A stretch of DNA of 64,000 nt from Perna viridis (taxonomy: Eukaryota). The stretch spans positions 33,551,644-33,615,643 of the forward strand of contig CM074524.1 of NCBI GenBank assembly GCA_037379345.1, in the 5' to 3' direction. Positions 5,858 through 48,200 of this stretch are shown here, piece by piece. The notes beneath the pieces were generated by a model. That model saw only the letters and a program-made list of their open reading frames with translations. It searched no databases and was not told where the DNA came from. Numbering within the stretch: the stretch's first letter is position 1; every line of letters begins with the position of its first letter. Made by a program: the position numbers and the translations under genes.

Positions 5858-8800
5858 AAATAATCAATGGCATCCATCCTGCTGCAACAGAAAGCTTACT
5901 GGCTAAAGCTAGAATATTGATGACAAGTCCCTTGTCTGAGAGTTCTGTAAAATATGAGCGAAATGTATCCTTTAAATACCAGCAGTTTTGTTACTGAATG
6001 AAGCTCCTGCAAAATTCCAATGGCTGTTCGTAAATACACCTCTTTCAAATAAATGATATGAATACAATGTTTTGATAAAAAGTAAGCAATGGCTTTAATG
6101 CATTTTAAAACTCAACACTGGCAAAAGCTAACGTTGATTTTAAGTCATTTGTCTGAGAGTTTTTGTATAATACATATGTATGCGCGAAATTTATCCTTTA
6201 TATACCGATGGTTTTGTTTCTGAACGAAACTATGACTGTTCTTAAATTTATATCTTTCTAATGTACGGCATAAATATATTTTTAAAGAGCAGATAACGGC
6301 TTTAGCGTATTTTTAAAAAATAGAATCTTTTTTATATGAGGTGAAATAGTGGGAAAGTGGTTACACTCTTTGAAACGTTCAGGTTTCCCGCACGCTCAAC
6401 GATGCACGAACCTTCAATGGGAAACGTGAACGTTTCAAGGTGTGTAAGACTGCCAAAATAAATGATATTAAACAAAAAATTAAAAATAAACAAGTAGAAT
6501 TTTAAATATTTTCCATATTCCCAAAACACGTATTTACCTAAAAATTGTATTATTCCGACCACAATTCCTGCTATTCCAGACATCAAGAAAAATACAACTG
6601 AAGTGCTCTTCCGTCCAAACCTAAATAAAAAAGATGGAATTAAAGTGAACGCTTATATGTACTGTACATGTACTATAAAGATAACTAATTTGATCAGTTT
6701 TGCAATTTCTGTTTACCTCCCCTTTCCAGTTAGGATAATTTATTCTTATCAGAGAAGATTTTTTTGCGAGTGTAAGTTCTACAGGTCTGTATATTGCGGA
6801 AAAATAACTTCCATGGAAATATAGCTCAATTAAAGCATTTTTTCGTGAAGCAAATAGGATTTACAACAAACATTGTATGTACACGTGATACGCCAATACT
6901 CACCTATTGGCAAGGAAACAAACAAAGAATGAAGACGATTCCATTAATCCAAGAAGTGACATATTCAAGTAGAGATTCCCAGAGAGTTGTGACACTCCAA
7001 ATGAAATGGCGTAAAAGCCGTATCCGCATGAAATCCTTAAATAAAACATGTTATCGCTGTGACCATGCGGTAGATATGTTATTGCTATAGGAACAAACTA
7101 CCATGAAAATGATTTTATCCAGTAATTGATCAATTTAATTGATTTCAATTTTGAAAACACATTGCATGGTTTGGGATTTCATTTATGAATGGCTCATATC
7201 TATTTCAAAAGAAAGAAAAAAGCTAAGGACATTTTCTGTTTTCAGTGGTTTAGAATTCTTTCATTTTTTCGTTTTTCATTAAAAGGTAAATTTTATGTAC
7301 ATGTGCATAAACTCTAAAACGACTAAAAATGATTTCTTACCACGTAAATCCTAGTAACAATGTTATTTTCAGTAGACGTGTGTTTTTTAATATATCCAGT
7401 ACAGTATATTTCCGCCCTTTTTCAACATTTTGCACCAGTTTAGATAATCTTTTGAGAACTTTATCTTTGTTCGGTGGGTCAACTCGATTAATCTGTGCCA
7501 CCTTGACCATGACATCGTAGGCGTCCTCGATTTTTTTATGCGATACCAACCATCGGTAACTTTCTGGAATAGTTCTACAAAACACGTTATTTCAAAATGA
7601 ACCAGTTTTATACATAATTTAATTCTGAAATACAATACATTTTAGTATCAAGACAAAAATATGTATGACCTTTTACTGAATCCAAGCTAAAAACATAATA
7701 CCGGATTTCTCAATCTTCAAGATAGGAATATCCGATTACTCGGTTCCATGGCGAATTATTTCTAAACTAATCGTTTAAAAATTGATATAAGCTAGACTGA
7801 CAATAAATTGTAACTTTGCAATAAAAATATGGTCTGTCACAGTTTTAAGTTCAGTTTGATAAACACCTTATCCTCTTCAAATAATTGAGGAGGAGGGTCT
7901 ATTTGATAAATTGTGTCATCCCAGATTTCTTCGTAGAATGAAATTTAAACTTACTAGCTAAATCATTCTGGAATAATAATAATTCGAAAGAATACTAAAT
8001 GCAATCAGCACCATATAGTAATAAAAAGAAGTCGTTGCTCTATTATTTCTTAATCGCTTTGTTGACAGAAAGCAACTTTTTTCCGACGCAGTCGGTATAG
8101 TTTCGCTTTTTACCCTTTGACCTTAAAGACGCTCTTCTATGGAAACGCAATTCACCTGATCGCAATTCTGTTTCCCGATTGTGTGGCGTTCGAAAAAAAC
8201 TGTTTTGAAAATTTGAAATTGCGTGAAAAAAAAATGTATCGAAAATTTAAAATTGCGTGCCATGTGTTATTTTCATGAAAGAAATGTAGAAACTTAGAAG
8301 TAAAAAGAACAAAATTTTACTGCGTCGGCTATCTTTTTTTAAAGAATAATACATGTACTTGTTTCGGAGAGTAATCAAGGGAACCAAGGTTATAGCGGTA
8401 GTAAAAGGATGCAAACCAGGGACAAAGACCAGACATGGAAAACAGACATACACAACAAAGAACAAAAAGTAAATAAAATCAAACATATAAAGTAACAAAA
8501 GCAAATGAGCAACTCTGAAAACTGGGAGCATGGACCAGGTGTACCGATAGGGTAACCTCTGCTTTTCTTGCAACACCCGCCGAGTTGCTCATAAAAAGTC
8601 TGTCCGGGGTAGACAAACGAGGAAAGGAAAACTATGACCCGTTGAATAAATCAGTTTTCATGGTGCAGATGGATACACCATAACGAACCACGAGTTCATG
8701 ATGACGACAATAAAACTTCTGTAGTGATGACTTCAATCTTGTAGCAACATAACCCTGTTCTAGAATCCTATTTGTTAGAGTTCTAGCGAGATACAAAAAG

Positions 8801-11107
8801 TCTGCGTAGTTTCGGCAAGCTCTGGCATAACGTATGAGTTGTGATATGATCACTGCATACGCAGGTGCTGAAGGGATGTTGCCACAGATGAAAGGAAAGT
8901 TGACAATTTTGAATGAAAAGTTATCATGTTTGTCGTAAAGTTTGGTCAATAGTTTTCCTTTACCATCGATTTCTAAGTGTAGGTCAAGATATGAGGCTGA
9001 CTTCACAGTGTCTGTAGTATCCTTTATCTCAAGTTCTTTGTGGTAGATGCCATGTATCAAATCCCCGAAATTAGGATTGTTTAAAGATAATACGTCATCT
9101 GTAAAGCGGAAACTGAGATTAAAGGATCTAGCCAAACGATATTCTTTCTTTCGGATCAGATCAGCTATAAAGTCAGCCTCATAAGAGTGAAGGAATAGGT
9201 CAGCAAGCAAAGGAGCACAATTTGTTCCCATTGGAATGCCGACCGTTTGTTGAAAAACACGTCCACCACGCTGGACAAATATGTTGTCGATTAAAAATTC
9301 CAGCATTTTGTAAACATCTTTCAAGTATCAAGTAGTTATTATTAGGCGAGCACGTTTCTTCTCCAAAATAATGTTTTATACACACTGTTAAATCTTTTAC
9401 CAACCTAACGGCAAGAAACCAGGGGAGACAGAACACAGCTGCTGCAATCTGAACATACATCCAGTCGTGGAGTAAATAACACATCAATCCATTAGTAATA
9501 GCGCCTAATGGCCACATTGGAAGTGACAATACCATCGACCTATGCTTCATTGGTATAAACTCAGCAAGATATGCAATGTCTATAGTAAGGTACCATCCAC
9601 ATCCAATACCAACGAGGAAACGTATAGCTGCAAACATCTCCCAGCTTACAGAAAAAGCACCTACTACATTAAACACTAAGAGAATTACTATAGAGGCGTA
9701 GTAAGTTGGTTTACGTCCGTACAGATCACCTACTTGACCGGAAACAAATGCACCAACAAGAAGTCCAAACATTTGGATTGTAGTAATTGTTGACATGATC
9801 CACTTTTTATCACAAACAAGGTCAAACTGCAAAAAAAGGCATTTCATTGCATTATTGCATTTTAGGTGTGTGTAAATTTTGATTTGTTGTATTTTTACAA
9901 CTATGCACATCCGGGGTACAATGTACTTTACTAAAACCACCAAAATTTATATTCTGGCGGTCGAAACTATAATGTTATACTTACAAGACTTCGACATATA
10001 TCGAGCAGTTTGAATGCTGACCTATTTCGCGATGAGTTAACGTCCTGTCCTAAATGTAACTGTAGGTGCCCGTGGGCAATTAAATTTTCTCTAGTGCCCT
10101 CTTTACATTCATGCTCGCCAAAGTTTTAATAATAAATGTATCTATGACGGCGGAATAATTATTGAACATATCCTTTTGTGAAACGATTTATAATACTTGT
10201 GCATGTTTATATTCATTACGGTACAACGCTTTGTTACAGAAGTCCTCGTGTTGTTTTATTTCTAAGTTGATATAACAATCAGTATCTCGTTATATCGACC
10301 TAATATTCCGTTATAATGATATACTTTCGGTTTTCTTCCTGGAAATTGAATAAAATCCCTCATTTTACGTATAATATGATTCAACTTCAGTTTTTGATTC
10401 ATTGATATCTAATACATTGTATCCTCTGTACGGAATTCAATTTTCTTTTCGTTACTCTTCTAAAGCAAAAGGTAAAGTGGAAAGCTTTAAATGTCTACAA
10501 CGCTAGGTTTTGTAAATGGGAGGCTATTTTCAATTATGTTGTTTGGTTGGTTGGTTTTTTCTTTGTTTTTATTTTCTTTTTATTTGTTTGTTTGTGTGTT
10601 TTTCGTTGGGTTTTTTTTCGTTTGTCTTTTATTTCTTTTAATTCCTCTGACGTTGTAATGCACTCAACTGAACAGCCAGTCAATTATGACAATTAAATAC
10701 ATTCGTTAAGGCGGCGGAGAAATATCCTTTATTCAAATTTAAGATGTTTACATTTTTGTGTGTATTTGTTACTTTTAAATCTAACTCATTTCTTGCAAAA
10801 TTACCTCGCTCACTATTGTATTCATTGCTGGGTCAAAGATTTTGGTCGAACAATCCAGTTCTTCTGTGATGTTTTCAATTTTACAGACTTGATCAAATGT
10901 TGAATTTGGCATGTAACGTGTCCCAGATTCCGTAACCCAGGTACATGTCCAGTCCGGGATGACTCCTCCAAACGCCATCATTAGAACGCTCCATGCTATG
11001 GTAGCTTTACTTCCTAAAACAACTATCGTCAGTATAAACTGGAATCGTCCGAGACCGCCCAAGTCCGTCAAGATGTTTTCAAGATATTCGTTCAGTTGTA
11101 ACGACAT
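5827..11107 (-). CDS. SLC22-family (organic cation/anion transporter-like) MFS transporter, paralog 1, coding exons 1-6
   Basis: GT-AG exons in consistent phase: 10805-11107 (ATG), 9405-9826, 7341-7574, 6904-7035, 6538-6620, 5827-5944. Motifs GGLGRFQ, FDLVC, GDLYGRKP, IPESYRWL, GNLYLN, FGRK, SELYPTVVR. Last two exons not found in window. Confidence 0.93.
6364..6444. mobile_element. Tiny fold-back MITE in an SLC22 intron
   Basis: About 26-bp imperfect inverted repeats (cactctttgaaacgttcaggtttccc / gggaaacgtgaacgtttcaaggtgtg) flanked by TA on both sides. Confidence 0.6.
8368..9320 (-). mobile_element. 5'-truncated Penelope-like retroelement (Naiad-type), copy 1, in an SLC22 intron
   Basis: ORF 8632..9324 with PLE RT motifs QQTVGIPMGTNCAPLLADLFL, FRFTDD, SYLDL, KLYDK, ISQLIRYARAC; 3' UTR shared with copies at 25.2 and 41.9 kb. 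Confidence 0.9.
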
Positions 11108-16000: not shown

Positions 16001-18606
16001 TCCAAAGTAGAGATTAAATATGCAATAATTGACCAGAATAATGACTGTTTCAGTTTGCAATCACTAAGTGAATAAATATACATTGTGTTCGGCTTTATCA
16101 AGAAAATATTATAGCGGAATTACTACTCATTAAGGAGTCACGCCGTATGACCTAGATACCTATAGTGATGTGAAATAGAAATTCCAGATTCATAGATCAT
16201 CAAATAATATTTATTTTGACGTATAGGGAAAAACCCTTACACTAATGATTACAAAGTCCAATCACTTAAGTTTGATTTCTATGGTTCCGATTAAATTGGA
16301 AGCTGTCGTAAATTCCAAAGTTCGAAAAAACGATTAAATTGAAATGTTATGTCAATATCTATTATTTCTTCTGATTTATCCATAAGGTCTATATATTATT
16401 TCTGCCTTAAAGCTAGCCAGCCCACCCCCACCCCCACCAAAAAAATATATCTGGCTCTGTTCGGCTATAACTTATATTGATGACCCCCTGAAATCTTGGA
16501 TCCACTCGTGCCAACATTCATTAAGTAAGTATAATAAGACAAGTTCGCGTCAATTGTGTGCTAAATTTAAATATATATTACATGACATGGTTTGTTATGA
16601 CATCCTCTAGCCTTCATGTTAGTAAATATCATATGAAGTTGATATGGGAAAGGGCATTCAGTGATTTTTGTTTAATTTAGTAATTGAACATAAAGGATTA
16701 AATCTATGGTCATTTCACTGTATACTCATTTTGACATATTTTCTGTTATTTATTGGCAAAGAGAACTGAATAAATGCCCCTGTAGCTTCAGTTCTAATTT
16801 TATGATTTAATAGGTATGGACTGTACAATATACCTTTTACTGTGTATTTTGCAATGTAAAACAGACTTCTTAAAAATACAGAATTTATATGGAGAATTTG
16901 TCAAAAGACAACAACCCCACCGGATTTAAAAATGTCAGCTCAAAGCCACACATTGGTCTTCAACGAATGCGTGCGACGCGGAAACCCTCAAACAATCTGG
17001 CAGGCTACAGCTGGCCCAAAAACATTTAAATTGCAAATCGATATGAAAATAAAATAGTAAAGGCACAAAAGCTTACTCCTCGGCAATGAATGTGATGTTA
17101 AACAGAATGGTAATGAGTATAGTTAACTTCCGACTATTAATTAAACAAAAACGCACTTGATTTCTTTCGTACAAAAACATCTAAGAAATGTCAATGAATT
17201 TATTATGATATAATACAAACGCATATATTTTTCATTGAACAAACCGTTTATTCAGACTTACCTTGCAAAAATATCGATGTACTGGCTTTCACTCAATAGT
17301 AAAATATTAAATGCCTACATAAACCGCGTTGAGCCAATCAAATAGACCGGATTACTCAGATGATTTTTTGCGTATTTAAAGAAAGAAAGGGGGTGAAACT
17401 TAACTTCATCAACACTACGCTTATAATTTTGGTGTTATGCTGCTGTGTTTTTTTTTATAAAGTAAGCGTTATTGATGTGGATGTTTCAGATCTGTGGTTG
17501 ATCTCATATCGCAATGCTAGACCAAACAAATTTCATTTCTTACCGTTTAGAACAGTATGTAAAATCTATACATGTATATGTTTCGAGCATTTTTTCTGTC
17601 AATTTAGTATTTTTTTAACGATTTTTCGTTTACTTTTCGTATCGATCTTATTATTTTTCACAATGATTTAGCTATTGTAATATAGTATAAGCAACATATA
17701 TAACACTTTACATGTATAAAAAAAATACAAAAAAGAAAGAATAAAAACGCAATAACTGATTTATTTCTGTTTGAATTTCGGAAATGTTCATGCAGTATTA
17801 AAGAATAGGGGTAACAACAAAATTACCGAAACTTAATCCGATCCATGATCAAGTAAGGTCAAAAATCAATCTTACAAACAAGATATTACACCACTGGAGT
17901 ATCTGCTACCACAATGGTCCAGATTTGGTACAGTCATTTCAAACAAAATGGTGGGTTAAATCTAGGATTTAAAGGGTGCCAAATTACCATCTTCCATTGC
18001 GGCGTGAATATACCAGTGGTGAACAAATAGCATTTGCACGTTATTGTCGTAAATCAGCTGTCATATAAGCACACAGAACAATAGGATAGCAAAATATCAA
18101 ACTTTATACCATACTTAAAAGAACTGTGTTAAATGGAAGGTGTTAACACTAGTGATATGTGTATTTACAACTGCTTGGCCTAGTAAGCCCAACGCTATTA
18201 TGTAATAAAGAAAAGAGTATTGACCTCTAGCCTTAAATAAAATAACAGTTATATCAATGGGGGAAAATACATTGAGATATTGTTTGTGTGTTGAAGAAAT
18301 ATATATGGAACGCCATAGCTGCTTTATGTTGACTGATATCATTATGTTGTTATACGTGTTTATTTCAAGGTGATACTTAATATCTTTGTGGTCATACTCT
18401 TTTACTTTGTTGTGATACTTTTTCACTTTGTGGTCTTAATTTGTCCTTTTGTTATGGTACTTTTCACTTTGTGATCATACTTTTTCACATTGTTGCGGTA
18501 CTTTTTCGCTTTGTGAACATACTTTATCGTGACGCAGTGATTCGTTATGTTATAATACCTTTACATTATATGATGACATTTTCCCGTTGTGGAAATAGAC
18601 AAAAAA

Positions 18607-19870
18607 ATGGCCGAAAGCAAAATTACTGATGTGTTACAAAAAATCGGACTTGATCATTTGAATGCAAACTTCGTGAGAGAAAATAAATCACACCAAACAT
18701 AACATGTTTGCTATCAGTTGAAGAGATGAAAACATTAGGCATTTCACAAACATCAGACATGGTGAAACTTAGAACTGAATGTGTGAAATATGGTGACAAT
18801 AAATACACAACACAAAATAGATTTGATATTCCGATGTCTACTTTACACAATTTATTGGACCAAGACTTTAAAATATCAGAAACTGCAAAAATACTAGTAG
18901 TGTCAGAGCGGACAATATATCGTAGAATGATAAAATTCAGTCTAAGTAAATATGATTTTTCTCTAATTAGTGACGAGGGACTTGATGCTCCACTATTGGA
19001 AGTAACTATCCATTCTGCAGAGAAAATATGTTAAAACAAATGTATATTACGAAAGGTATACGAGTTCAAAGATGACGTCTTCGTGATTCTATTCATCGTA
19101 TATATACACATGGAGTAATTAAGCGGAAAAAGGGTAGACTTCGTCGAAGAGTTTACAATGTTATAGGCCCTAACCATCTCTGGCATGTCAATACAAATCA
19201 TAAGCTAGTTCGTTGGCGAATTATTGTTGTTGGCGGAACAGTCGGTCGCCTTGTAACTTTCCTGAAATGCTATGACAATAACACATCTAAAACTGTGTTA
19301 GAATGTTTTCTTTCAGGAGTTAACAAATTTGTTCTACCCTTAAGAATCAGATTAAATAAAGGTCTCCAAAATGTATCTATTGTAGACTTTATGTTAACTG
19401 AAAGTGGCGAAGGCAGTATAATAAATGGTACTAGCACCCATAATCAGCGTATAGAAAAACTTTGACGCGACGTTTTCGAGGGAATTTTAAGTTATTTTTA
19501 TAACTTGTTTTATCCCATTGAAGATTTGGATATACTTGACTCGTTAAATCAAGTTCATCTGGCCGCTTTACATTACATATACATGGATGAATTGAAAAGA
19601 AGATTGGAGTCTAGCCAAGCTTCATGGTCTGGTCGCAGAATTAGACTATTGCAAAATCCTGTTTGAATACCCTTTATGCAAGATTATGTAATCGATGGAT
19701 ATTTTGATGTTGCTAGCGCAGAGGAAGGTGGTCGCCCAATTCTCGAATCTTTCAGTAATTTGATAGGTGAGGAATGTAGAGAAATACTGGGAGAAGAAAT
19801 ACATCACACATACGATAATTATGCAATTGATGAATTGTATCTTGCAGTTGAGGAAAATTATCTATTCTTA
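18607..19870 (+). pseudogene. IS3EU-type DDE transposase (SAM-like + HTH + integrase core), left arm, disrupted
   Basis: MAESKITDVLQKIGL..., AKILVVSERTIYRRM (HTH), RRVYNVIGPNHLWHVNTNHKLVRW, DNNTSKTV, STHNQRIEKL*RDVF; frameshifts and stops. Confidence 0.85.
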
Positions 19871-20400
19871 TCTCTCAAAATAAGTATTAATGACTACAAG
19901 CAACAATCTCTTAATATGTACTGTAAAATATTTGAAACACTCCCCTCTAGATATGCCATTGTCTATTACCATGTTAAACTATTGTGAAGACTATGTTTAC
20001 ATACACTTGCTAAAACATGTAACAAAACTAACTACATGTAATACAAAATACTAACAGAACATTCAACAAAACTAAATTACTGGTACAAAAAAATCAGTGA
20101 GATGATGGAAACCATCTTCATTGAAAACTATGTCCGGCATTTAAAAACAGGCACATCATATCTATATAATAACAGTTCATTTATCAATTAAATACTATGT
20201 AATAAAGCCATAATGACAGCAATATACATGTACATGTATTTTACAATTTAGTGAATGTACAAAAATATGGACCCACTATCCATACCATAGGAAATTGAAA
20301 TACATTTATATCTTTCTGAAATATATTCTTGATACAGTTTTCTGTATTTTTGTACATATTTAAGGTTTATGTGAAATAAAAGGGGATGATTCTGTTTTAG

Positions 20401-20550
20401 GTGGGAGAAGGGGAATTGTATCCCTGCAGCATATACTAGAGTTGGTGACCGGAGCGTCTGAGGATTCACTTCTAGGATTTAATTCCAATCCTTCAATAGT
20501 TTGTCGAGGTCCGAGAAGACCTGAGTTTTTTTATCAACATTTAATACATG
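20401..20550 (+). pseudogene. HECT E3 ubiquitin ligase C-lobe exon remnant (G2E3-like) inside the IS3EU-like element
   Basis: After acceptor ttttag: GRRGIVSLQHILELVTGASEDSLLGFNSNPSI..FVEV..LSTFNT*, matching the HECT C-lobe L.F.TG...P..GF...LPTAxTC pattern with TGA at the catalytic Cys position. Confidence 0.6.
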
Positions 20551-21289
20551 AAATGATGTTACCCAAACCAACACCGGAAGTTGTACGACTATAGGTTGGT
20601 ATAGAAAGAAAGAGAATGTAGTGTTGTGCCACACTCCATATCCCTGCAAACTTCAACCTGCAAACTCTGCTTTTGGAGGGGTATATATAAAAATCACCCT
20701 GCCAGTCTGTCTGTTTGTCCACATTTCTTGTAAGTGCGAATCCTCCTAAGATTTTATGAAACTTTACATTAAGGAGGGACACTATATGGAGATTTGCATA
20801 AAGAAAATGAAGTTTAATTACAAAGCAACATCTTTTTCCTGCACAAAGCTTGCGAAGTAGAAGGGGGTCCCCGTGAGTGGACTCACTGTATATTTAGTTG
20901 ATATTGGGGTCAAAAGTCAACGTGTGACACCTTTTGTGAATGATAGCCTTGTTGCAAGGTGGGGGACTAGGCCACTGCATTGCTATTGTTTATTTCTATT
21001 CTTTCCCAGCAAAATATTGAACTTTACATGCGAGTTCAATTATAATATGCAGGGCTATTGTCTGATATTGATATGTGTCTAGTTACCTTTCTGCATAGAC
21101 ATGAACCATTTCATTTTTGATGTATCTGTTAATCATCTCTTTTATTTGTGAAGATTGTAAAAGTTCTATGATCTTTTTGGTTGACCATGGTTATATATAA
21201 AGCATAGATAGATAACTGGCACATTAGTTAACTGCTATTAGTCCTTTGTTTGTACATTTGTGCAATTTATAATAATTTTCTTTATTCGG

Positions 21290-21580
21290 ACATCGTCACA
21301 AAAAGTGGCTGTCACCTATAGTGATCACTCAGTCTGCTGTTAACAAACTTGTGTCCAGGCTGTAACTTTATTATCTTTCGATGTAGGCTTTTGATATTTG
21401 GCATGTGGGTAGATCATCTAACGACAATGTGTCGCGTACCATTGATAGTGGCTTATGACGTTGAACTGTGACTTCAAGGTCAAATTTCTTGTTTTTCAGT
21501 GACAAAGTCGTGTCCAGGCTGTAACTTTTTTGTCTTTCGATGTGGGCTTTAATATTTGGCATTTGGGTAGATCATCTAAA
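21290..21580. repeat. Non-autonomous element fragment with ~160-bp internal tandem repeat
   Basis: gtgtccaggctgtaacttt...tttggcat.tgggtagatcatctaa occurs twice (21351-21421, 21511-21580). Confidence 0.55.
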
Positions 21581-23399
21581 TCCATTTAGTATATATTGCT
21601 GTATTGCCAGGGCGGGGCCCACTTAGATTTATTCCATCTCAATGATTTTTAGTTTCCATTGTAACTAGGGACTCTGGCCTCTTTGAACTGATATTATGGT
21701 GTGTTTAAAAAATTTCCACAGTGGCTAAATATTAGAGGTTGAGGGTTGTGATCTTTTAACCCCGCCACATTTTTTTTTGCGACTGTACAAAGGAACTTCT
21801 GGCCTCTGTATTTCTTGTTTCATCTTCCTCTTTAGTTTATTTTTATGTTGTTTGAGTAAACAGGGGCAACTTTTTCGTTGTACTTTTGTATAATGATGTT
21901 TTTGGGTCAGGTGCAGCCTTGCAGTATGCCCTGTGGTATGTGGGGTTCCTCATCTTTCATTTTCATCCCGGGGAGGTTGTTATCTCTTTGACATAATCAC
22001 CATACCTATTTTTGTTATATCATATAGGTTTTGTGCCAAAAACTGACGAAGTCTGCAAAACTCTAGTTTTAATGTTATAAATATTGCTTTAACGTTCTAG
22101 TCACAATGTAAATCTGTTATGACTGCACATTGTAAAAGTTCTACTCTGTTACATACATAATGTAAATTGTGTGCCAAAGTTTGCCAAAGTCTTGTTTAAA
22201 TGTTATAGATAAGAAGATGTAGTTGTTTAGTTTTGTTTAATTCTCTAGTCATTATTATTCTGTTACAATAGTACATGGTAAAAGTTCTACCCCTTTTTAG
22301 CTCATCTTGCCCAGTACCAGAGTGAACCTTTGCCATCACAATGTAATCACTGTCATCTGTCTTTCATCAGTCTGTCATAAACTTTACACATTTTTGTCTT
22401 CTTACTTGGAACTGATTGACTGATTTCTAATAAAAAGTGCTCTTTGAGATGTTCTTTTCAAATAATCTTAAAATGCTTCAAAATTTTTCCACCTTTCAAG
22501 GGTATGATGTTCCAGTAGAGTAAGAGCGATTTTTGCAGAATCGTGTTCTTTGAGAACCTCTTAGTTGACATTTTGCAGCTTGCCTTGCAGAGTGAAAAAA
22601 ATTTTGCCCTCTTAAGGCATGAGTTTAAATGCCGAACATGGTTTTAAATGAAGATGGTTTCCATCATCTCACTTATATTTTGTACCAGTAATTTACTTTT
22701 GTTGAATGTTCTGTTAATATTGTGTATTACATGTAGTTATTTTTGTTATATATTTTAGCAAGTGTATCCAATCATAGTTTTCACAATAGTTTGACATGGT
22801 AATAGACAATGGCATATCTAGAGGGGAGTGTTTTAATTATGTACATGTTTAAGACATTGAGAGATTGTTGCTTGTAGTCATAAGTATTTTGAGAGATAAA
22901 ACATATGTATTTTTTTCTCAACTGCAAGTTTCTATCTCTCCATTTCCTGAACAAGCAATGGAAAGTATTGAATTCACTGAAAGGCTCATAATAGTACTTA
23001 AGTTTCAACATCAAATGAAGTTACCACTATATATCAATTGTAAAACAATGGTTGCTTGGTTTCTACTTCTTGTGTTCACGAAAATTTCCAAATCATATTT
23101 TAATTGTAATTATGGATAAAATATGCTTTTACTTTCAGCTTATCACTATTCACAAAAGAAGCAACTGAAAGAAGCTGCAATTATCAAACATCTTGCTTCC
23201 CATACAGAGAGCGATCAGATGCTTATTTACTCAGTGGTTTGTGAACAAAACTAGGTTATTTATGACTCAATTAAGTTTTTCAGCTACTTTTTGAAGTATG
23301 TCTTTTTTGCCACTTTTATGTCTTTTCTTGGAGATATTTGCCATTTCAGTTTTTGTTCGTATATGGCAAAGATAATTAACAAAGTAATCGACAAATCTT

Positions 23400-24206
23400 A
23401 TTCACACTGCCTTTGCATCTTTCAGTTAAACATAAAGTCTGCAATGGATACATTTTGGAGACCTTTATCAGATCTGACACTTTAGGTAGACCAAATTAGT
23501 CCAAACTCCACAAAGAAAGCATTCTAACACAGTTTTTGGATGACTTATTGTCATAGTGTTTCAGAAAGGTTACAATGCGACTGGAACCGTCTATTCCGTC
23601 AACAACAATAAATCGCCAACAAACTAGCTTATGATTTGTATCGACGTGCCAGAGATAGTTAGGGCCTATAACATTGTAAACTATTCGATGAAGTTTACTC
23701 TACTTCCGCTCACTTACTCAATATGCATCTATGCGATGAATAGAATCACGGAGACGACATCTTTGAACTCGTAATTAACATTAGTTTTAACATATTTTCT
23801 CCGCAGAGTGGATAGTTCTTCGTTATTTCAAACAGTGCAGCATGAAGTCCCTCGTCACTATTTAGAGAAAAAATCATATTTACTTAGACTGAATTTTAAT
23901 GACATTCTATGATATACTCTCCGCTCTGACACTACTAGTATTTTGCAGTTAATGATAGTTTAAAATCTTGGTCCCGTAAATTTGTAAAGTAGATATCGGA
24001 ATATCAAATATACTTTATGTTGTGTATTTATTGCCACTCAGTTCTAAGTTTCACCATGTCTGATGTTTGTGAAATGCCTAATGTTTTCATCTCTTCAGCT
24101 GATAGCAAACATTATGCCTGGTGTGATTTTTTTCTGTCACGAAGTTTGCATTCAAATGAACAAGTCCGATTTGTTGTAATACATCAGTAATTTTAGGTTC
24201 GGCCAT
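23400..24206 (-). pseudogene. IS3EU-type DDE transposase, right arm, disrupted and internally deleted
   Basis: Reverse-complement copy of the left-arm gene; retains WHVDTNHKL, GIDGSSR and VRSDKG. Confidence 0.85.
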
Positions 24207-24294
24207 TTTTTTTTCTATTACAAAAAGCGGGAAAATGTCGTCATATTATTTAAAGGTATTACAACATAACGAATCACTGCGCCACGATAAAGAC

Positions 24295-24590
24295 CATAAA
24301 GCGAAAAAGTACCACAACGAAGTGAGAAAGTATAACCACAAAGTGAAAAAATACCACAACAAATTGAAAAAGTATCACCACAAAGTGAAGAAATACCACA
24401 ACAAACCGAAAAAGTACAACAAAAGTGAAAAAGTATCACCACGAAGTGAAAAGGTACCAATACAAAGTGAAAAAGTATCACCACAAAATGAAGAAGTACC
24501 ACAACAAAGCGAAAAAGTACCACAACTAACAAAGAGAAAAAGTATCAGCACAAAGTGAAAAAGTACCACAACAAAGTGAAGAAGTGAGAC
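24295..24590. repeat. ~21-bp subterminal tandem repeats (aaagtgaaaaagtaccacaac) of the IS3EU-like element; mirror array at 18370-18530
   Basis: Degenerate tandem array; source of spurious ORFs 24218..24532, 24235..24558 and 24375..24593. Confidence 0.85.
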
Positions 24591-25158
24591 CACGAGATAA
24601 TGATATCAGCCAAGATAAGGCAGCTATGGCGTTCCGTTCCATAGAAATACATACACTTGTAATGGGAGGTATTGTATTGAAAATCAAGTCGTTTGTCATT
24701 GTTGTTCTGACTACAAAAGTAATTTAAAAGGTGTTTTTATGGTTGTATATGACAGAGATGTTTTTTCTCTCCATACATGTATACATGTAACGAGCCTTGT
24801 GATTAGTTAATAAAATATCTTATTTTGATAGTTTTACTAAAGTATAAATAACCTAATCACTAGATGAAATGAAATACATCTCATATATTTTAATGGATTT
24901 AAGTAAACCCTTCCATCGATGGCGTGAAATCTTTCACTACAAAAATGAAAAGCCTATGGATTATCTCAAAATGCACTTAAATTCATTAAAACTACCTTCC
25001 TGACAGACAACAATCAGTGAAACTTGGTACAGCACTGAGTGAATGGGAGAATATCTACAAAGGGTTTATATATGTGATTTATGAAGATCACCAAAGTAAA
25101 TATCAACAATTACTAGAAACATATAAATTGCAAACATTATAAATCAGACACATGAGAA

Positions 25159-45296: not shown

Positions 45297-48200
45297 ATGG
45301 CTACAAGAGGTGACAAGGAAGTAGTAAGTTGAGTACTGTGTTTTGATTTGAAAAAATCTTTAAAATAACATTTTCTCCGTTCAGTACCGACATTTACATG
45401 TATTTATACCTGTAGCATAACTTGGATCGAAATCGAACTTGTGTCAAAATGACTAACAGTTTCACACGAATAAATGTGAATGCTTTGATTTTTGAATGAC
45501 TCTACAATGTGTACACCAAAACCACAAGAAGGGTATTGTCTCACTAGAGGCAAGAAAATTCCTGTTTTCAGCTGAATGAGATATTATTAAGTTAATATAG
45601 CACCTACATTGTAGAAGTACGAGTACAAGAGAGAGATATCTTAGACATCTTGGGTTTCTGATATTTCCCAATCTTGCATGACAAAAGCGCATGTTTGATT
45701 CTTTTTCTCAATTCGAGTTAGTTATCTGATAAAAATGACCTGCATTTAACAGCTGATACGTCACGTCCAAGTGTAAAAGGTCACTTAGGTTTAATTAATC
45801 AGTCAATGTATGTATTCAAAATGTATTTATATTTCGATGTTTTTGACAGCCTTCGATTTCTCAGCATATAGTAACAATATGCCTTAAACTTGGAACGAAA
45901 TCCTGCAGTATAGCGTATCTTTTTCGTAGTCAGTTCCATACTGATCCAACCAGAGTTCTACTATTTACGTTCTGGGGTAAAAATTTGGCCGCGGAGTTTC
46001 CACCTTCTTTGTTGATTGATGATTATGAAGAAGTTTTCTTTGGACATCAAGCTACAGAAAAATGCCTTGAAAATGGTGGTAGCGGGATTTACATAGAGAA
46101 TGTGTTCAAAGATATTTTAACTGTAGAGGCAAGTATATAAATGCATTTGTTTGTAATTCGTTTGGAATTCGGATTGTGAGAATATATACAGGTATAGAAA
46201 TACAAAACACAATACCTTTATGACATGTAGTTTACAAGCGATATCGTTAATATATAAATCATAAGTAATACAGATCACCGAGGTACAATGTACACAAGCT
46301 GATGTACCGCATAAATCTGATTAAGTTGAATGGAACACCATATCTGATTTCTGATGTTAAATATGTTCGGTGCTTTCTGTATTATGTTCATTAGTACATT
46401 TGTTAAAATGCAGATCGGTAGTTTTAATATTATGATCAGTAGTTCTGACATTATAATTGGTACCTTTGTCTTTATGTTCAGTAGTTTCATAATCATATGT
46501 AGTGCTGTTTGAATTATGTTCGGTACTTTCGACATTAAGTTCATAAGATGAGGATCGTGAAGCACCGTCATGTTGGCGGAAATTTTGACAAATCCATCAA
46601 ATTATTATAAATATGTGCTGTGTACAAGTAATTTCGTTAAAACTGTAACTTTTATTACCATCCATAACGTGTACAAGTCAGAAAAAAAATGTACAGGTTT
46701 TCTATATGATCCATCAGAAAACAGAACTCCGTTTGGGTACTAACAAGACTGATAATCTTTTCCTGATTATTCTAAGAATTTTTACCTATGTTCATGAAAA
46801 AGTCAAGGGCAAAGAATTGCATAATTTGTGTATAACTAGTAAACAAAGAATCTTCAACGGTAGCGGTACCTTTGGAAGCTTCACTATCCATACGCCCAAC
46901 GGGTGCAGTGTAGTAGTTTTTTACCATTGCTCACTGTTTCCCCTTTTTTTAACCAGAATTATCAGAAACTCACTGCAAGTTTGCATGGTCTATATATACC
47001 AGGTTTATAAAACCCGCAAAACATCAGAAGTTCAATTCTGCCCCATTTAAATATATATGGTCTAACAATTCTCAAAGTTGTATCTAAATTGCAAGATCCA
47101 TTTTTTTTCTTTTTTGGAAAATGTTCTTTGTGCTGATGTGACCGCTGATTTACCAATTATGACAATATTATGCATATGCCTTTTAATCACCACTGGTATA
47201 GTCATGCTGTCGTGGAAGAGGGGGTTTAGCGCGTTGTAAAACCTAGATCTAACCCACCATTTAGTCTAAGGTATCTGTACCAAGTCAGGATCATTGCGGT
47301 ACCAGCTTCTTAGGTGGTGTAATATCTATTTTGCCAGATTTATTTTGGACTTGATTATGAATCGGATTAGTGTTTGGTAATTTGTTATTTCCCTTTGTTA
47401 TCTGAAGAAACAAATGAATAAAACAATAAATATGAAGCAAGAGCACTGACGCTGGAAAAATTATACTTGATGTTGGTGACAAATGTTTAAAGGGAACAAC
47501 AAATATGAAAAAGAGACCACTAGATATAGATTGGTATGATTCAGATGTAAAAGATCTCAGATAGTGCATTAGACAAAATTGGTGTCTCAATACCCATTCA
47601 GCAAGGATCTGAAAGACGGTTTCATTGTGATTTACAATATATATACATGTAAGTGGGTGTTTAGGAAACTTTCAACTTCTGTTTAATAGACTAGAGCATT
47701 TAGAACATCAGATCACTTGTTTGTTTTGAAAAGTGCAATTTACAAATATAATGGAAAGAAACAAAAACTCTACACACGTTTTGTAGACATGACTTTAAGA
47801 AAGCCTTCAACTCATTCTTACATGAAGTGACTTATACTTATGATCACTTCACCCTGGACTGTTCGTAAGCATAAAACTATTCATACGGGAATAAAGGGAA
47901 CCTCTTAAATCAAAGTTCAAACTTAAAGCTGATTTTCTCTCTTTCGACCCTGGGCCGAAATTTTCAATCCATTTGTTTAGTCATATAGTTAAATCAATTT
48001 ACTACTACATTGCTGATAGACTTTTTATCTTGATGTAAATGCGTTTAATTAAACAATATTCTGCAAATTCATTGAAAAAGCTTAAATTTTGCTTCAATGT
48101 CAGGTATGAGATTTCATATGATATTAGATATAATTGAAACTTCGATATCATATTTCTGTAGGTTTGAGAATTTACCTTGTGTCATCTTCATTAGTTAATT

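What the first reader, a model, noticed from the sequence alone, without database searches (positions are those of the whole stretch)
18296..24649. Composite, Tn10-like fold-back IS3EU transposon: two inverted transposase-bearing arms apparently inserted as one unit
Seen: 18302-20155 and 22618-24643 are inverted copies of the same element end. Each has the tatggaac terminus, ~21-bp subterminal repeats and an inward-pointing DDE transposase gene. The whole 6.3 kb is flanked by gaaata (gaaatata / gaaataca). Known, from memory: IS3EU elements have TAY..RTA ends and ~6-bp TSDs. Inference: two copies of one end formed a composite element with ~2 kb gene-containing TIRs that transposed with a cargo spacer, as bacterial composite transposons do. 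The arms have complementary lesions: the right keeps both Asp motifs (WHVD, RSDKG) and the left keeps HNQRIE, so a full DDE triad can be reconstructed. Read-through transcription would give a long hairpin RNA against the family.
Basis: partly seen in the sequence, partly recalled or inferred. Interest (0 to 1): 0.8.

Follow-up and report, generated by a model that had tools for sequence, protein, structure and literature searches.

The report
Dead transposon with gene-long inverted ends
This is a decayed 6.3-kb IS3EU/GingerRoot-type DNA transposon whose inverted ends have grown to about 2 kb and each hold a copy of the transposase gene; at least ten loci in this genome share the layout, so it is an unusual structural form of a known transposon kind, not a new kind of element.

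Summary
Window 18304-24643 is one element with two inverted arms, 18304-20157 and 22617-24643. Each arm starts at a TATGGAAC terminus, carries 21-bp subterminal repeats and holds an inward-pointing rva_4 (integrase-like DDE) transposase pseudogene. The flanks GAAATATA/GAAATACA abut both termini and match at 7 of 8 positions (chance about 0.001-0.004). Contigs from three other samples bridge the junctions, so it is not an assembly artefact.

- IS3EU/GingerRoot features are met: TA..TA ends, and 6-bp TSDs in three relatives.
- It is not a Tn10-like composite, because there are no inner termini and no inner repeat arrays.
- Canonical relatives have 0.26-0.57 kb TIRs, one transposase gene and a convergent second ORF.
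- The best reading is a single element whose TIR was extended by an inverted copy of its 5' 1.85 kb, as described for Galileo in Drosophila.

Of 75 coding loci of this lineage in the genome, 11 carry the same coding segment on both strands. All 11 are convergent, and 10 are independent. A sister family's extended-TIR form sits at several unlinked loci, one with a perfect 6-bp TSD.

This particular element is single-copy, dead and not detectably transcribed. Whether it moved in this form or was rearranged in place is unresolved.

The parts
18296..18303 (.). Left copy of the target-site duplication, GAAATATA
   Evidence: abuts the TA terminus and matches the right flank at 7 of 8 positions.
18304..20157 (+). 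Left arm: 5' terminus, subterminal repeats, whole transposase pseudogene and about 280 bp downstream of it
   Evidence: inverted homology to 22617-24643, with a sharp inner boundary.
18375..18596 (+). Array of seven 21-bp subterminal repeats (ACTTTTTCACTTTGTGGTGAT-like)
   Evidence: (family D2).
18607..19876 (+). Left transposase pseudogene (weak N-terminal SAM-like match in the relative P0003, HTH, rva_4 core). It covers aa 22-451 of the intact 451-aa relative P0003. It has at least 3 in-frame stops and at least 1 frameshift, both catalytic Asp are Asn, and HNQRIE is kept.
20158..22616 (.). Spacer between the arms. Its unique stretches have no other copy in the genome, and it also holds nested dispersed repeats. 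No recognisable gene was found.
20655..20815 (.). Short dispersed repeat nested in the spacer
   Evidence: many hits at 70-88% identity; depth about 10 times that of its neighbours.
21216..22025 (.). Very abundant dispersed repeat with an internal tandem unit of about 158 bp, nested in the spacer
   Evidence: (D5, D6), 12, 20: thousands of candidate places; depth 30-80 times that of its neighbours.
22617..24643 (-). Right arm: an inverted copy of the left arm. The terminus carries a 5-bp GGAAC duplication.
22929..23397 (-). Block unique in the genome that replaces the Glu-bearing C-terminal half of the transposase in the right arm
23410..24206 (-). Right transposase pseudogene remnant (aa 97-277 detectable; keeps WHVD and RSDKG; several stops and frameshifts)
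24290..24605 (-). Array of twelve 21-bp subterminal repeats
   Evidence: (family D1).
24644..24651 (.). Right copy of the target-site duplication, GAAATACA

Best explanation
Window 18304-24643 is one decayed DNA transposon of the IS3EU/GingerRoot kind. Its terminal inverted repeats have been extended from the canonical few hundred bases to about 1.85-2.0 kb. The extension is an inverted duplication of the 5' end (terminus, 21-bp transposase-binding-type repeats, the whole transposase gene and about 280 bp beyond it), and this copy now forms the right end.

Inferred mechanism: during repair of a break, either after excision or inside the element, a 3' end lying in one TIR paired with the complementary other TIR. 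DNA synthesis then ran on past the TIR boundary into the gene, and the new strand was rejoined at an arbitrary point. This leaves a sharp inner boundary and no inside ends.

Shown: the two identical-type outer ends were integrated in one event, which left an 8-bp TSD (or a 6-bp TSD plus a TA slip). Not resolved: whether the extension preceded that insertion (the fold-back form moved as a unit) or happened in place afterwards.

The element is now inert. Both gene copies are pseudogenes, it is single-copy, it was present in every sample examined, and it was not detectably transcribed.
For: Family assignment:
- rva_4 core at E 1e-31.
- A conserved TATGGAACGCC terminus with 555 genomic matches against 11 for the control pattern.
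- Perfect 6-bp TSDs in three relatives: CAAACT, GGCATG and CTTCCG.

Canonical architecture in relatives: TIR of 0.26-0.57 kb ending just before the ATG, one transposase gene, and a convergent ORF2 (L058 and L063). L055 in this genome also holds a transposase gene with a convergent ORF2; its TIRs were not measured.

This element:
- Only two termini and two repeat arrays, both at the outer ends.
- The left arm holds the whole CDS.
- The inner boundary is sharp.
- The flanks match at 7 of 8 positions next to both termini, p about 1e-3.

Recurrence:
- 11 of 75 coding loci carry the same coding segment on both strands within 10 kb. All are convergent and none divergent, and the arm boundaries differ from locus to locus.
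- The C1:30.38 Mb example has arms 95-97% identical, one full gene plus one truncated inverted copy, and a perfect GGCATG TSD.
- Its architecture recurs at unlinked loci that do not share its unique flank.

Precedent: TIR extension by recruitment of adjacent internal sequence in Galileo (PMC3573991).

Not an artefact: contigs of three samples bridge the junctions.
Against: - No full-length canonical copy of this exact subfamily was found, so the spacer cannot be shown to be the element's own internal region. It matches no other copy.
- An ORF2 remnant was sought in the spacer and not found.
- The arms contain a non-homologous block (19425-19840 against 22929-23397), which needs an extra later event.
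- The distance tree of copies is star-like: arm to arm K2P is 0.125, against 0.15-0.18 to the nearest other copies. The arms are therefore not clearly a recent duplicate pair.
- The adjacent 6-mers do not match. The TSD has to be 8 bp (1 of 77 in GingerRoot, PMC6839031) or 6 bp offset by a TA.
Confidence: 0.7

Rival explanations
1. Tn10-like composite. Two separate, once complete copies of the element lay in inverted orientation. The transposase used their two outer 5' ends and moved everything between them, host DNA included, as one unit. The inside ends were lost later.
For: A single TSD flanks the outer ends. Each arm holds a gene-length copy. The arms differ structurally by a replaced block. 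They are only slightly closer to each other than to other copies, as two separate family members would be.
Against: There are no inside termini and no inner 21-bp repeats. Both arms stop at the same element position. The spacer has no parental locus elsewhere in the genome and no gene. No second copy of the composite exists. The other fold-back loci have one full gene plus a truncated inverted copy with differing boundaries, which fits duplication of one end better than paired whole elements.
Confidence: 0.15
2. Two independent insertions, or a local hop, in opposite orientation, followed by deletions. On this view the flank similarity is a chance AT-rich match and nothing moved as a unit.
For: The flanks are AT-rich and the adjacent 6-mers differ (AATATA against GAAATA). 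The arms are 12.5% diverged.
Against: A 7/8 match next to both termini has an empirical chance of 8.5e-4, or 4e-3 under liberal definitions. With about 75 coding loci in 723 Mb, roughly 0.08 chance pairs within 10 kb are expected (own arithmetic), but 11 are seen and all are convergent.
Confidence: 0.05
3. Assembly artefact: a palindromic chimera produced by long-read assembly.
For: Fold-back chimeras are a known failure of long-read data (general knowledge).
Against: The arms are only 82-87% identical and differ by many indels. Short-read-derived contigs from three samples in two other studies bridge the left outer junction and both inner junctions.
Confidence: 0.01

Closest known systems
[quoted passage not shown]
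   Same: Integrase-like DDE transposase without an HHCC zinc finger (Pfam rva_4). TA..TA termini. Target-site duplications of 6 bp, rarely 7-8 bp. TIRs present, and variable internal content.
   Different: Published TIRs are 100-150 bp (Selaginella). Canonical relatives found here have 260-570 bp TIRs built of 16/21-bp repeats. This element's inverted ends are 1.85-2.0 kb and contain the whole transposase gene. Canonical relatives also carry a second, convergent ORF of about 347 aa that this element lacks.
Galileo / Foldback-type elements of Drosophila with extended TIRs (PMC3573991)
   Same: Long TIRs that are internally repetitive. The TIR is lengthened by recruiting the sequence just inside one TIR as an inverted copy next to the other TIR. 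Many structural variants occur within one genome.
   Different: Galileo belongs to the P superfamily and has an unrelated transposase. Its reported extensions recruit spacer sequence (F1/F2), not the complete transposase gene. The resemblance is in how the structure arises, not in family membership.
Bacterial composite transposons (Tn10, Tn5)
   Same: Two inverted transposase-bearing arms bracket a central segment, and the outer ends act together, giving one TSD.
   Different: In Tn10 and Tn5 each arm is a complete IS with an outside and an inside end. Here the arms have no inside ends and the centre holds no identifiable cargo gene.

Membership tests
IS3EU/GingerRoot | DDE transposase of the integrase/IS3-IS481-like type | tested here: met
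   PF24764 rva_4 at E 1e-31 (left arm) and 8e-16 (right arm); intact relative P0003 scores rva_4 at 3e-66 and rve weakly; the D, D, E motifs WH(V/L)D, RSDKG and HNQRIE are recognisable.
IS3EU/GingerRoot | 5'-TA...TA-3' termini | tested here: met
   TATGGAAC...GTTCCATA in the window and in seven other copies.
IS3EU/GingerRoot | 6-bp (rarely 7-8 bp) target-site duplication | tested here: inconclusive
   Relatives show perfect 6-bp TSDs: CAAACT, GGCATG, CTTCCG. The window element shows an 8-bp TSD at 7 of 8 positions, or GAAATA offset by a TA. The adjacent 6-mers match at only 4 of 6 positions.
IS3EU/GingerRoot | Transposase groups with Repbase IS3EU / GingerRoot proteins in a tree | not testable with these tools
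   No Repbase sequences are on hand. The assignment rests on Pfam rva_4 together with the terminus and TSD features.
Tn10-like composite transposon | Each arm is a complete insertion sequence with both an outside and an inside end | tested here: not met
   the terminus motif and the 21-bp repeats are found only at 18304 and 24643; the arms end at about 20157 / 22617 without any terminus.
Tn10-like composite transposon | Cargo gene(s) between the arms | tested here: not met
   no Pfam, PDB-sequence or ORF2 match in the spacer; the spacer is nested repeats plus unique sequence with no parental locus.
Tn10-like composite transposon | The unit transposes as a whole (several copies with the same inner junctions and different TSDs) | tested here: not met
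   the inner arm ends, the unique spacer parts and the right-arm block occur once in the genome. Only the shared TSD speaks for joint integration.
Extended-TIR / fold-back form (as in Galileo) | Sequence just inside one TIR is repeated in inverted orientation next to the other TIR, which lengthens the TIR | tested here: met
   for the window. for C1:30.38 Mb. Searches show that canonical relatives lack it.
Extended-TIR / fold-back form (as in Galileo) | P-superfamily (THAP) transposase | tested here: not met
   the transposase is rva_4, so the resemblance is structural and not a matter of membership.

The most novel reading that the evidence does not exclude
In this animal's IS3EU/GingerRoot lineage, inverted duplication of the gene-bearing 5' end is a regular and still mobile way of making derivatives; about one coding locus in seven has it. 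The resulting gene-length hairpins would be the source of small RNAs that silence the family, so the transposon would build its own off-switch.
Probability: 0.1. Interest if true: 0.7.

Novelty: new variant of a known kind. Interest (0 to 1): 0.4.

Why it matters
IS3EU/GingerRoot elements are little studied, and published descriptions give them short TIRs. This genome shows three things:
- canonical two-gene elements with repeat-built TIRs;
- a recurrent class of derivatives whose inverted ends reach into, or right through, the transposase gene;
- in a sister family, the same extended-TIR architecture at several unlinked loci, one of them with a perfect TSD.

This gives a second, unrelated superfamily in which TIR extension of the Galileo type can be studied. 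It also offers natural substrates for asking whether two identical 5' ends are enough for transposition, and a set of long hairpin-forming loci that could be tested as small-RNA sources. The window element itself is a dead single copy with no sign of function.

Tried and rejected
1. Inside ends or inner 21-bp repeats: none found.
2. Other copies of this composite: the inner arm ends, the unique spacer stretches and the right-arm block 22929-23397 occur only here.
3. Cargo in the spacer: no Pfam hit at E<=1 apart from noise. Another note's HECT-remnant reading of 20401-20550 got no support from Pfam or from a PDB sequence search. No remnant of the canonical ORF2 was found by phmmer or tblastn.
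4. Spacer against the internal regions of other copies (L034, L051, L054, L058, L059): no similarity except the nested abundant repeat.
5. Dating the arms against other copies: the distances are star-like and do not separate the models.
The one loose end at 18304 (sample X4) is the flank of another family copy at C10:22673169, not an empty allele.
7. Transcription or hairpin RNA: 12 partly fitting reads in about 1.6 thousand million letters (about 1.6 Gb) of one RNA-seq run. Small RNAs were not available.
Those loci are described from coordinates only.
9. Relatives in other assemblies: four of seven look-ups (six of them for fold-back forms) gave only about 1-kb contigs or nothing.
It was not needed for any test.
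Full report
**What is there.** The window comes from a 723-Mb, AT-rich eukaryotic genome (G000 contig C14).

A repeat scan and a gapped comparison confirm two inverted arms. Left 18307-19424 pairs with right 24635-23398 at 82% identity, and left 19841-20145 pairs with right 22928-22624 at 87%. Between these two stretches the arms are unrelated: left 19425-19840 against right 22929-23397. The right-hand block occurs nowhere else in the genome. Homology ends sharply at about 20157 and 22617.

The terminus TATGGAACGCCATAGCTGC is found only at 18304 (+) and, with a 5-bp GGAAC duplication, at 24643 (-). The 21-bp subterminal repeats lie only at the two outer ends, seven on the left and twelve on the right.

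**The protein.** Open stretches of the left arm match Pfam rva_4 (integrase core) at E 1e-31 and 2e-13, with an HTH region upstream. The right arm matches at 8e-16.

A search of 1.8 billion representative proteins gave 2770 relatives. One of them, P0003, is an intact 451-aa protein 60% identical over the core. Its Pfam matches are rva_4 at 3e-66, several HTH families and a weak SAM match.

P0003 aligns to the left arm from aa 22 to aa 451 (18687-19876). The left arm therefore holds the whole coding region, broken by at least three in-frame stops and at least one frameshift. The right arm aligns only for aa 97-277.

The left arm reads WHVN and RLNKG, so both Asp are Asn, and keeps HNQRIE. The right arm keeps WHVD and RSDKG and has lost the Glu-bearing half.

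**Family.** Published IS3EU/GingerRoot elements have TA..TA termini and 6-bp TSDs, a few of 7-8 bp, with TIRs of 100-150 bp in Selaginella (PMC10045372, PMC6839031).

The terminus motif has 555 matches in this genome against 11 for a control pattern. Three related copies show perfect 6-bp TSDs:
- CAAACT at C3:38222117-38228036;
- GGCATG at C1:30382147-30387062;
- CTTCCG in the intact relative L058.

Canonical architecture is visible in two relatives from other assemblies.
- L058 is 7.6 kb. Its 573-bp TIRs are built of 16/21-bp repeats and end 8 bp before the ATG. It has one transposase gene and a convergent 347-aa ORF2.
- L063 is 7.0 kb with about 260-bp TIRs and the same two genes.
- L055, from this genome (C11:24.018 Mb), also holds a transposase gene with a convergent ORF2.

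None of these has a second transposase copy. The window element is therefore a member of the kind with an abnormal structure.

**One integration event.** The eight bases outside each terminus are GAAATATA and GAAATACA, a 7/8 match directly next to both ends. Random position pairs in the window reach this in 8.5e-4 of trials, and in 4e-3 when several TSD definitions and offsets are allowed. The adjacent 6-mers match at only 4 of 6 positions. The TSD is therefore either 8 bp, as in 1 of 77 GingerRoot elements, or the usual 6 bp (GAAATA) with one extra TA in an (AT)n run. Either way, independent insertions are unlikely.

**Not a Tn10-like composite.** A composite of two whole elements should contain two inside ends. 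There are none, and no inner repeat arrays. The spacer 20158-22616 consists of three kinds of sequence:
- a short dispersed repeat at about 20655-20815;
- a very abundant repeat with 158-bp tandem units at about 21216-22025;
- unique stretches with no other copy or parental locus in the genome.

The spacer has no Pfam domain, no support for the HECT remnant proposed in another note, and no ORF2 remnant.

**Recurrence of the layout.** I searched the genome with the HTH and DDE-N peptides and grouped the hits within 10 kb. This gave 75 loci. Eleven carry the same coding segment on both strands. All eleven are convergent, with 5' ends facing outward, and none is divergent. Ten are independent, because C1:25.26 Mb is a segmental duplicate of C1:30.38 Mb that includes its flanks. 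For 75 loci in 723 Mb, roughly 0.08 chance pairs within 10 kb are expected (my arithmetic).

The arm boundary differs from locus to locus. It lies past the stop codon here, 18 aa into the DDE C-half at C1:30.38 Mb, and within DDE-N or the HTH elsewhere. The protein queries used can only detect duplication of the 5' side, so the all-convergent result is what one-end duplication predicts and is not what paired insertions predict.

The C1:30.38 Mb element (L051, 4,916 bp) has 1.09-kb arms that are 95-97% identical, one full gene, one truncated inverted copy, a sharp boundary and a perfect GGCATG TSD. Its internal region recurs at other loci:
- C10:26.916 Mb holds it next to a single gene copy.
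- C6:39.71 Mb holds it followed colinearly by part of the inverted arm, with a 209-bp deletion over the junction.
- C1:47.74 Mb and C5:26.49 Mb are shorter forms with both arms.

The unique left flank of L051 occurs only at its segmental duplicate. The extended-TIR form of that sister family therefore sits at several unlinked sites, which suggests it can transpose.

**Mechanism.** The closest described process is TIR extension in Drosophila Galileo. There, sequence just inside one TIR is found as an inverted copy next to the other TIR, and the authors attribute this to recombination or break repair between the long inverted ends (PMC3573991).

I infer the same here. A 3' end in one TIR pairs with the complementary TIR, synthesis runs inward through the gene, and the product is rejoined at an arbitrary point.

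- Shown: the structure, the single TSD and the recurrence.
- Inferred: the repair route.
- Unresolved: whether the window element was already a fold-back when it inserted, or was rearranged in place. The TSD fits both, and this composite is single-copy.

Arm-to-arm K2P is 0.125, against 0.15-0.18 to the nearest other copies. The tree is star-like, and this does not decide between the two timings.

**Reality and state.** Contigs from three DNA samples of two other studies tile the region and bridge the left outer junction and both inner junctions. One sample carries a 225-bp deletion allele (22409-22633) across the right inner boundary. One poly-A RNA-seq run gave 12 partly fitting reads, so there is no evidence for read-through or a hairpin RNA. 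Small RNAs were not tested. No empty-site allele could be sought, because the 6,000-letter limit prevents laying both outer junctions together.

**Verdict.** The composite-with-cargo interpretation is replaced by an extended-TIR (fold-back) derivative of a single IS3EU/GingerRoot element. This is a new structural variant of a known kind. It is of moderate interest, mainly because the layout is recurrent in this genome and appears to be mobile in a sister family.

Noticed in passing
window 22409-22633: A 225-bp deletion allele with 4-bp microhomology, seen in one sample (X7). It removes the boundary between the spacer and the right arm. Samples X3 and X4 carry the reference form.
   Followed up: no
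window 21216-22025: A very abundant dispersed repeat (thousands of candidate places) with internal tandem units of about 158 bp. The same repeat is nested in the C3:38.22 Mb copy of the transposon (L033 7249-7646).
   Followed up: partly
window 20401-20550: Another note (s1-766622) reads this stretch as a HECT E3 ligase remnant. The 76-aa open stretch 20364-20591 gave no Pfam hit at E<=1 and no HECT match among PDB sequences.
   Followed up: partly
L058 13109-14152 (-), L063 13685-14571 (-), L055 8618-9396 (-): Canonical elements of this lineage carry a second, convergent ORF of about 347 aa with no Pfam family (weak TRAFD1/XAF1 zinc-finger hit, E 0.04). It is conserved between two other assemblies and this genome.
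   Followed up: partly
G000 C15:18408705-18410366 and C15:18626618-18627190: The 21-bp subterminal repeat next to a transposon terminus appears expanded into arrays of 0.5-1.6 kb at two places on C15, which looks like an emerging satellite. Known from search coordinates only.
   Followed up: no
L051 1709-1762 / 8353-8406; L053 2837-3133 / 9136-9378: The C1:30.38 Mb fold-back and its duplicate at C1:25.26 Mb lie inside a larger segment that is bounded by its own inverted repeats and is duplicated at 94-97% identity. The fold-back may be nested in another mobile element or in a segmental duplication.
   Followed up: partly
L023 1461-1601 (G000 C2:43803845-43803985): Two family termini face outward only about 140 bp apart, forming a minimal two-end element. 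Its flanks (TTCTTG / TATTTG) match at only 4 of 6 positions.
   Followed up: no
window 46329-46347: A weak match to the transposon terminus motif (AATGGAACACCATATCTGA, 4 mismatches), possibly a decayed solo end of a related family.
   Followed up: no
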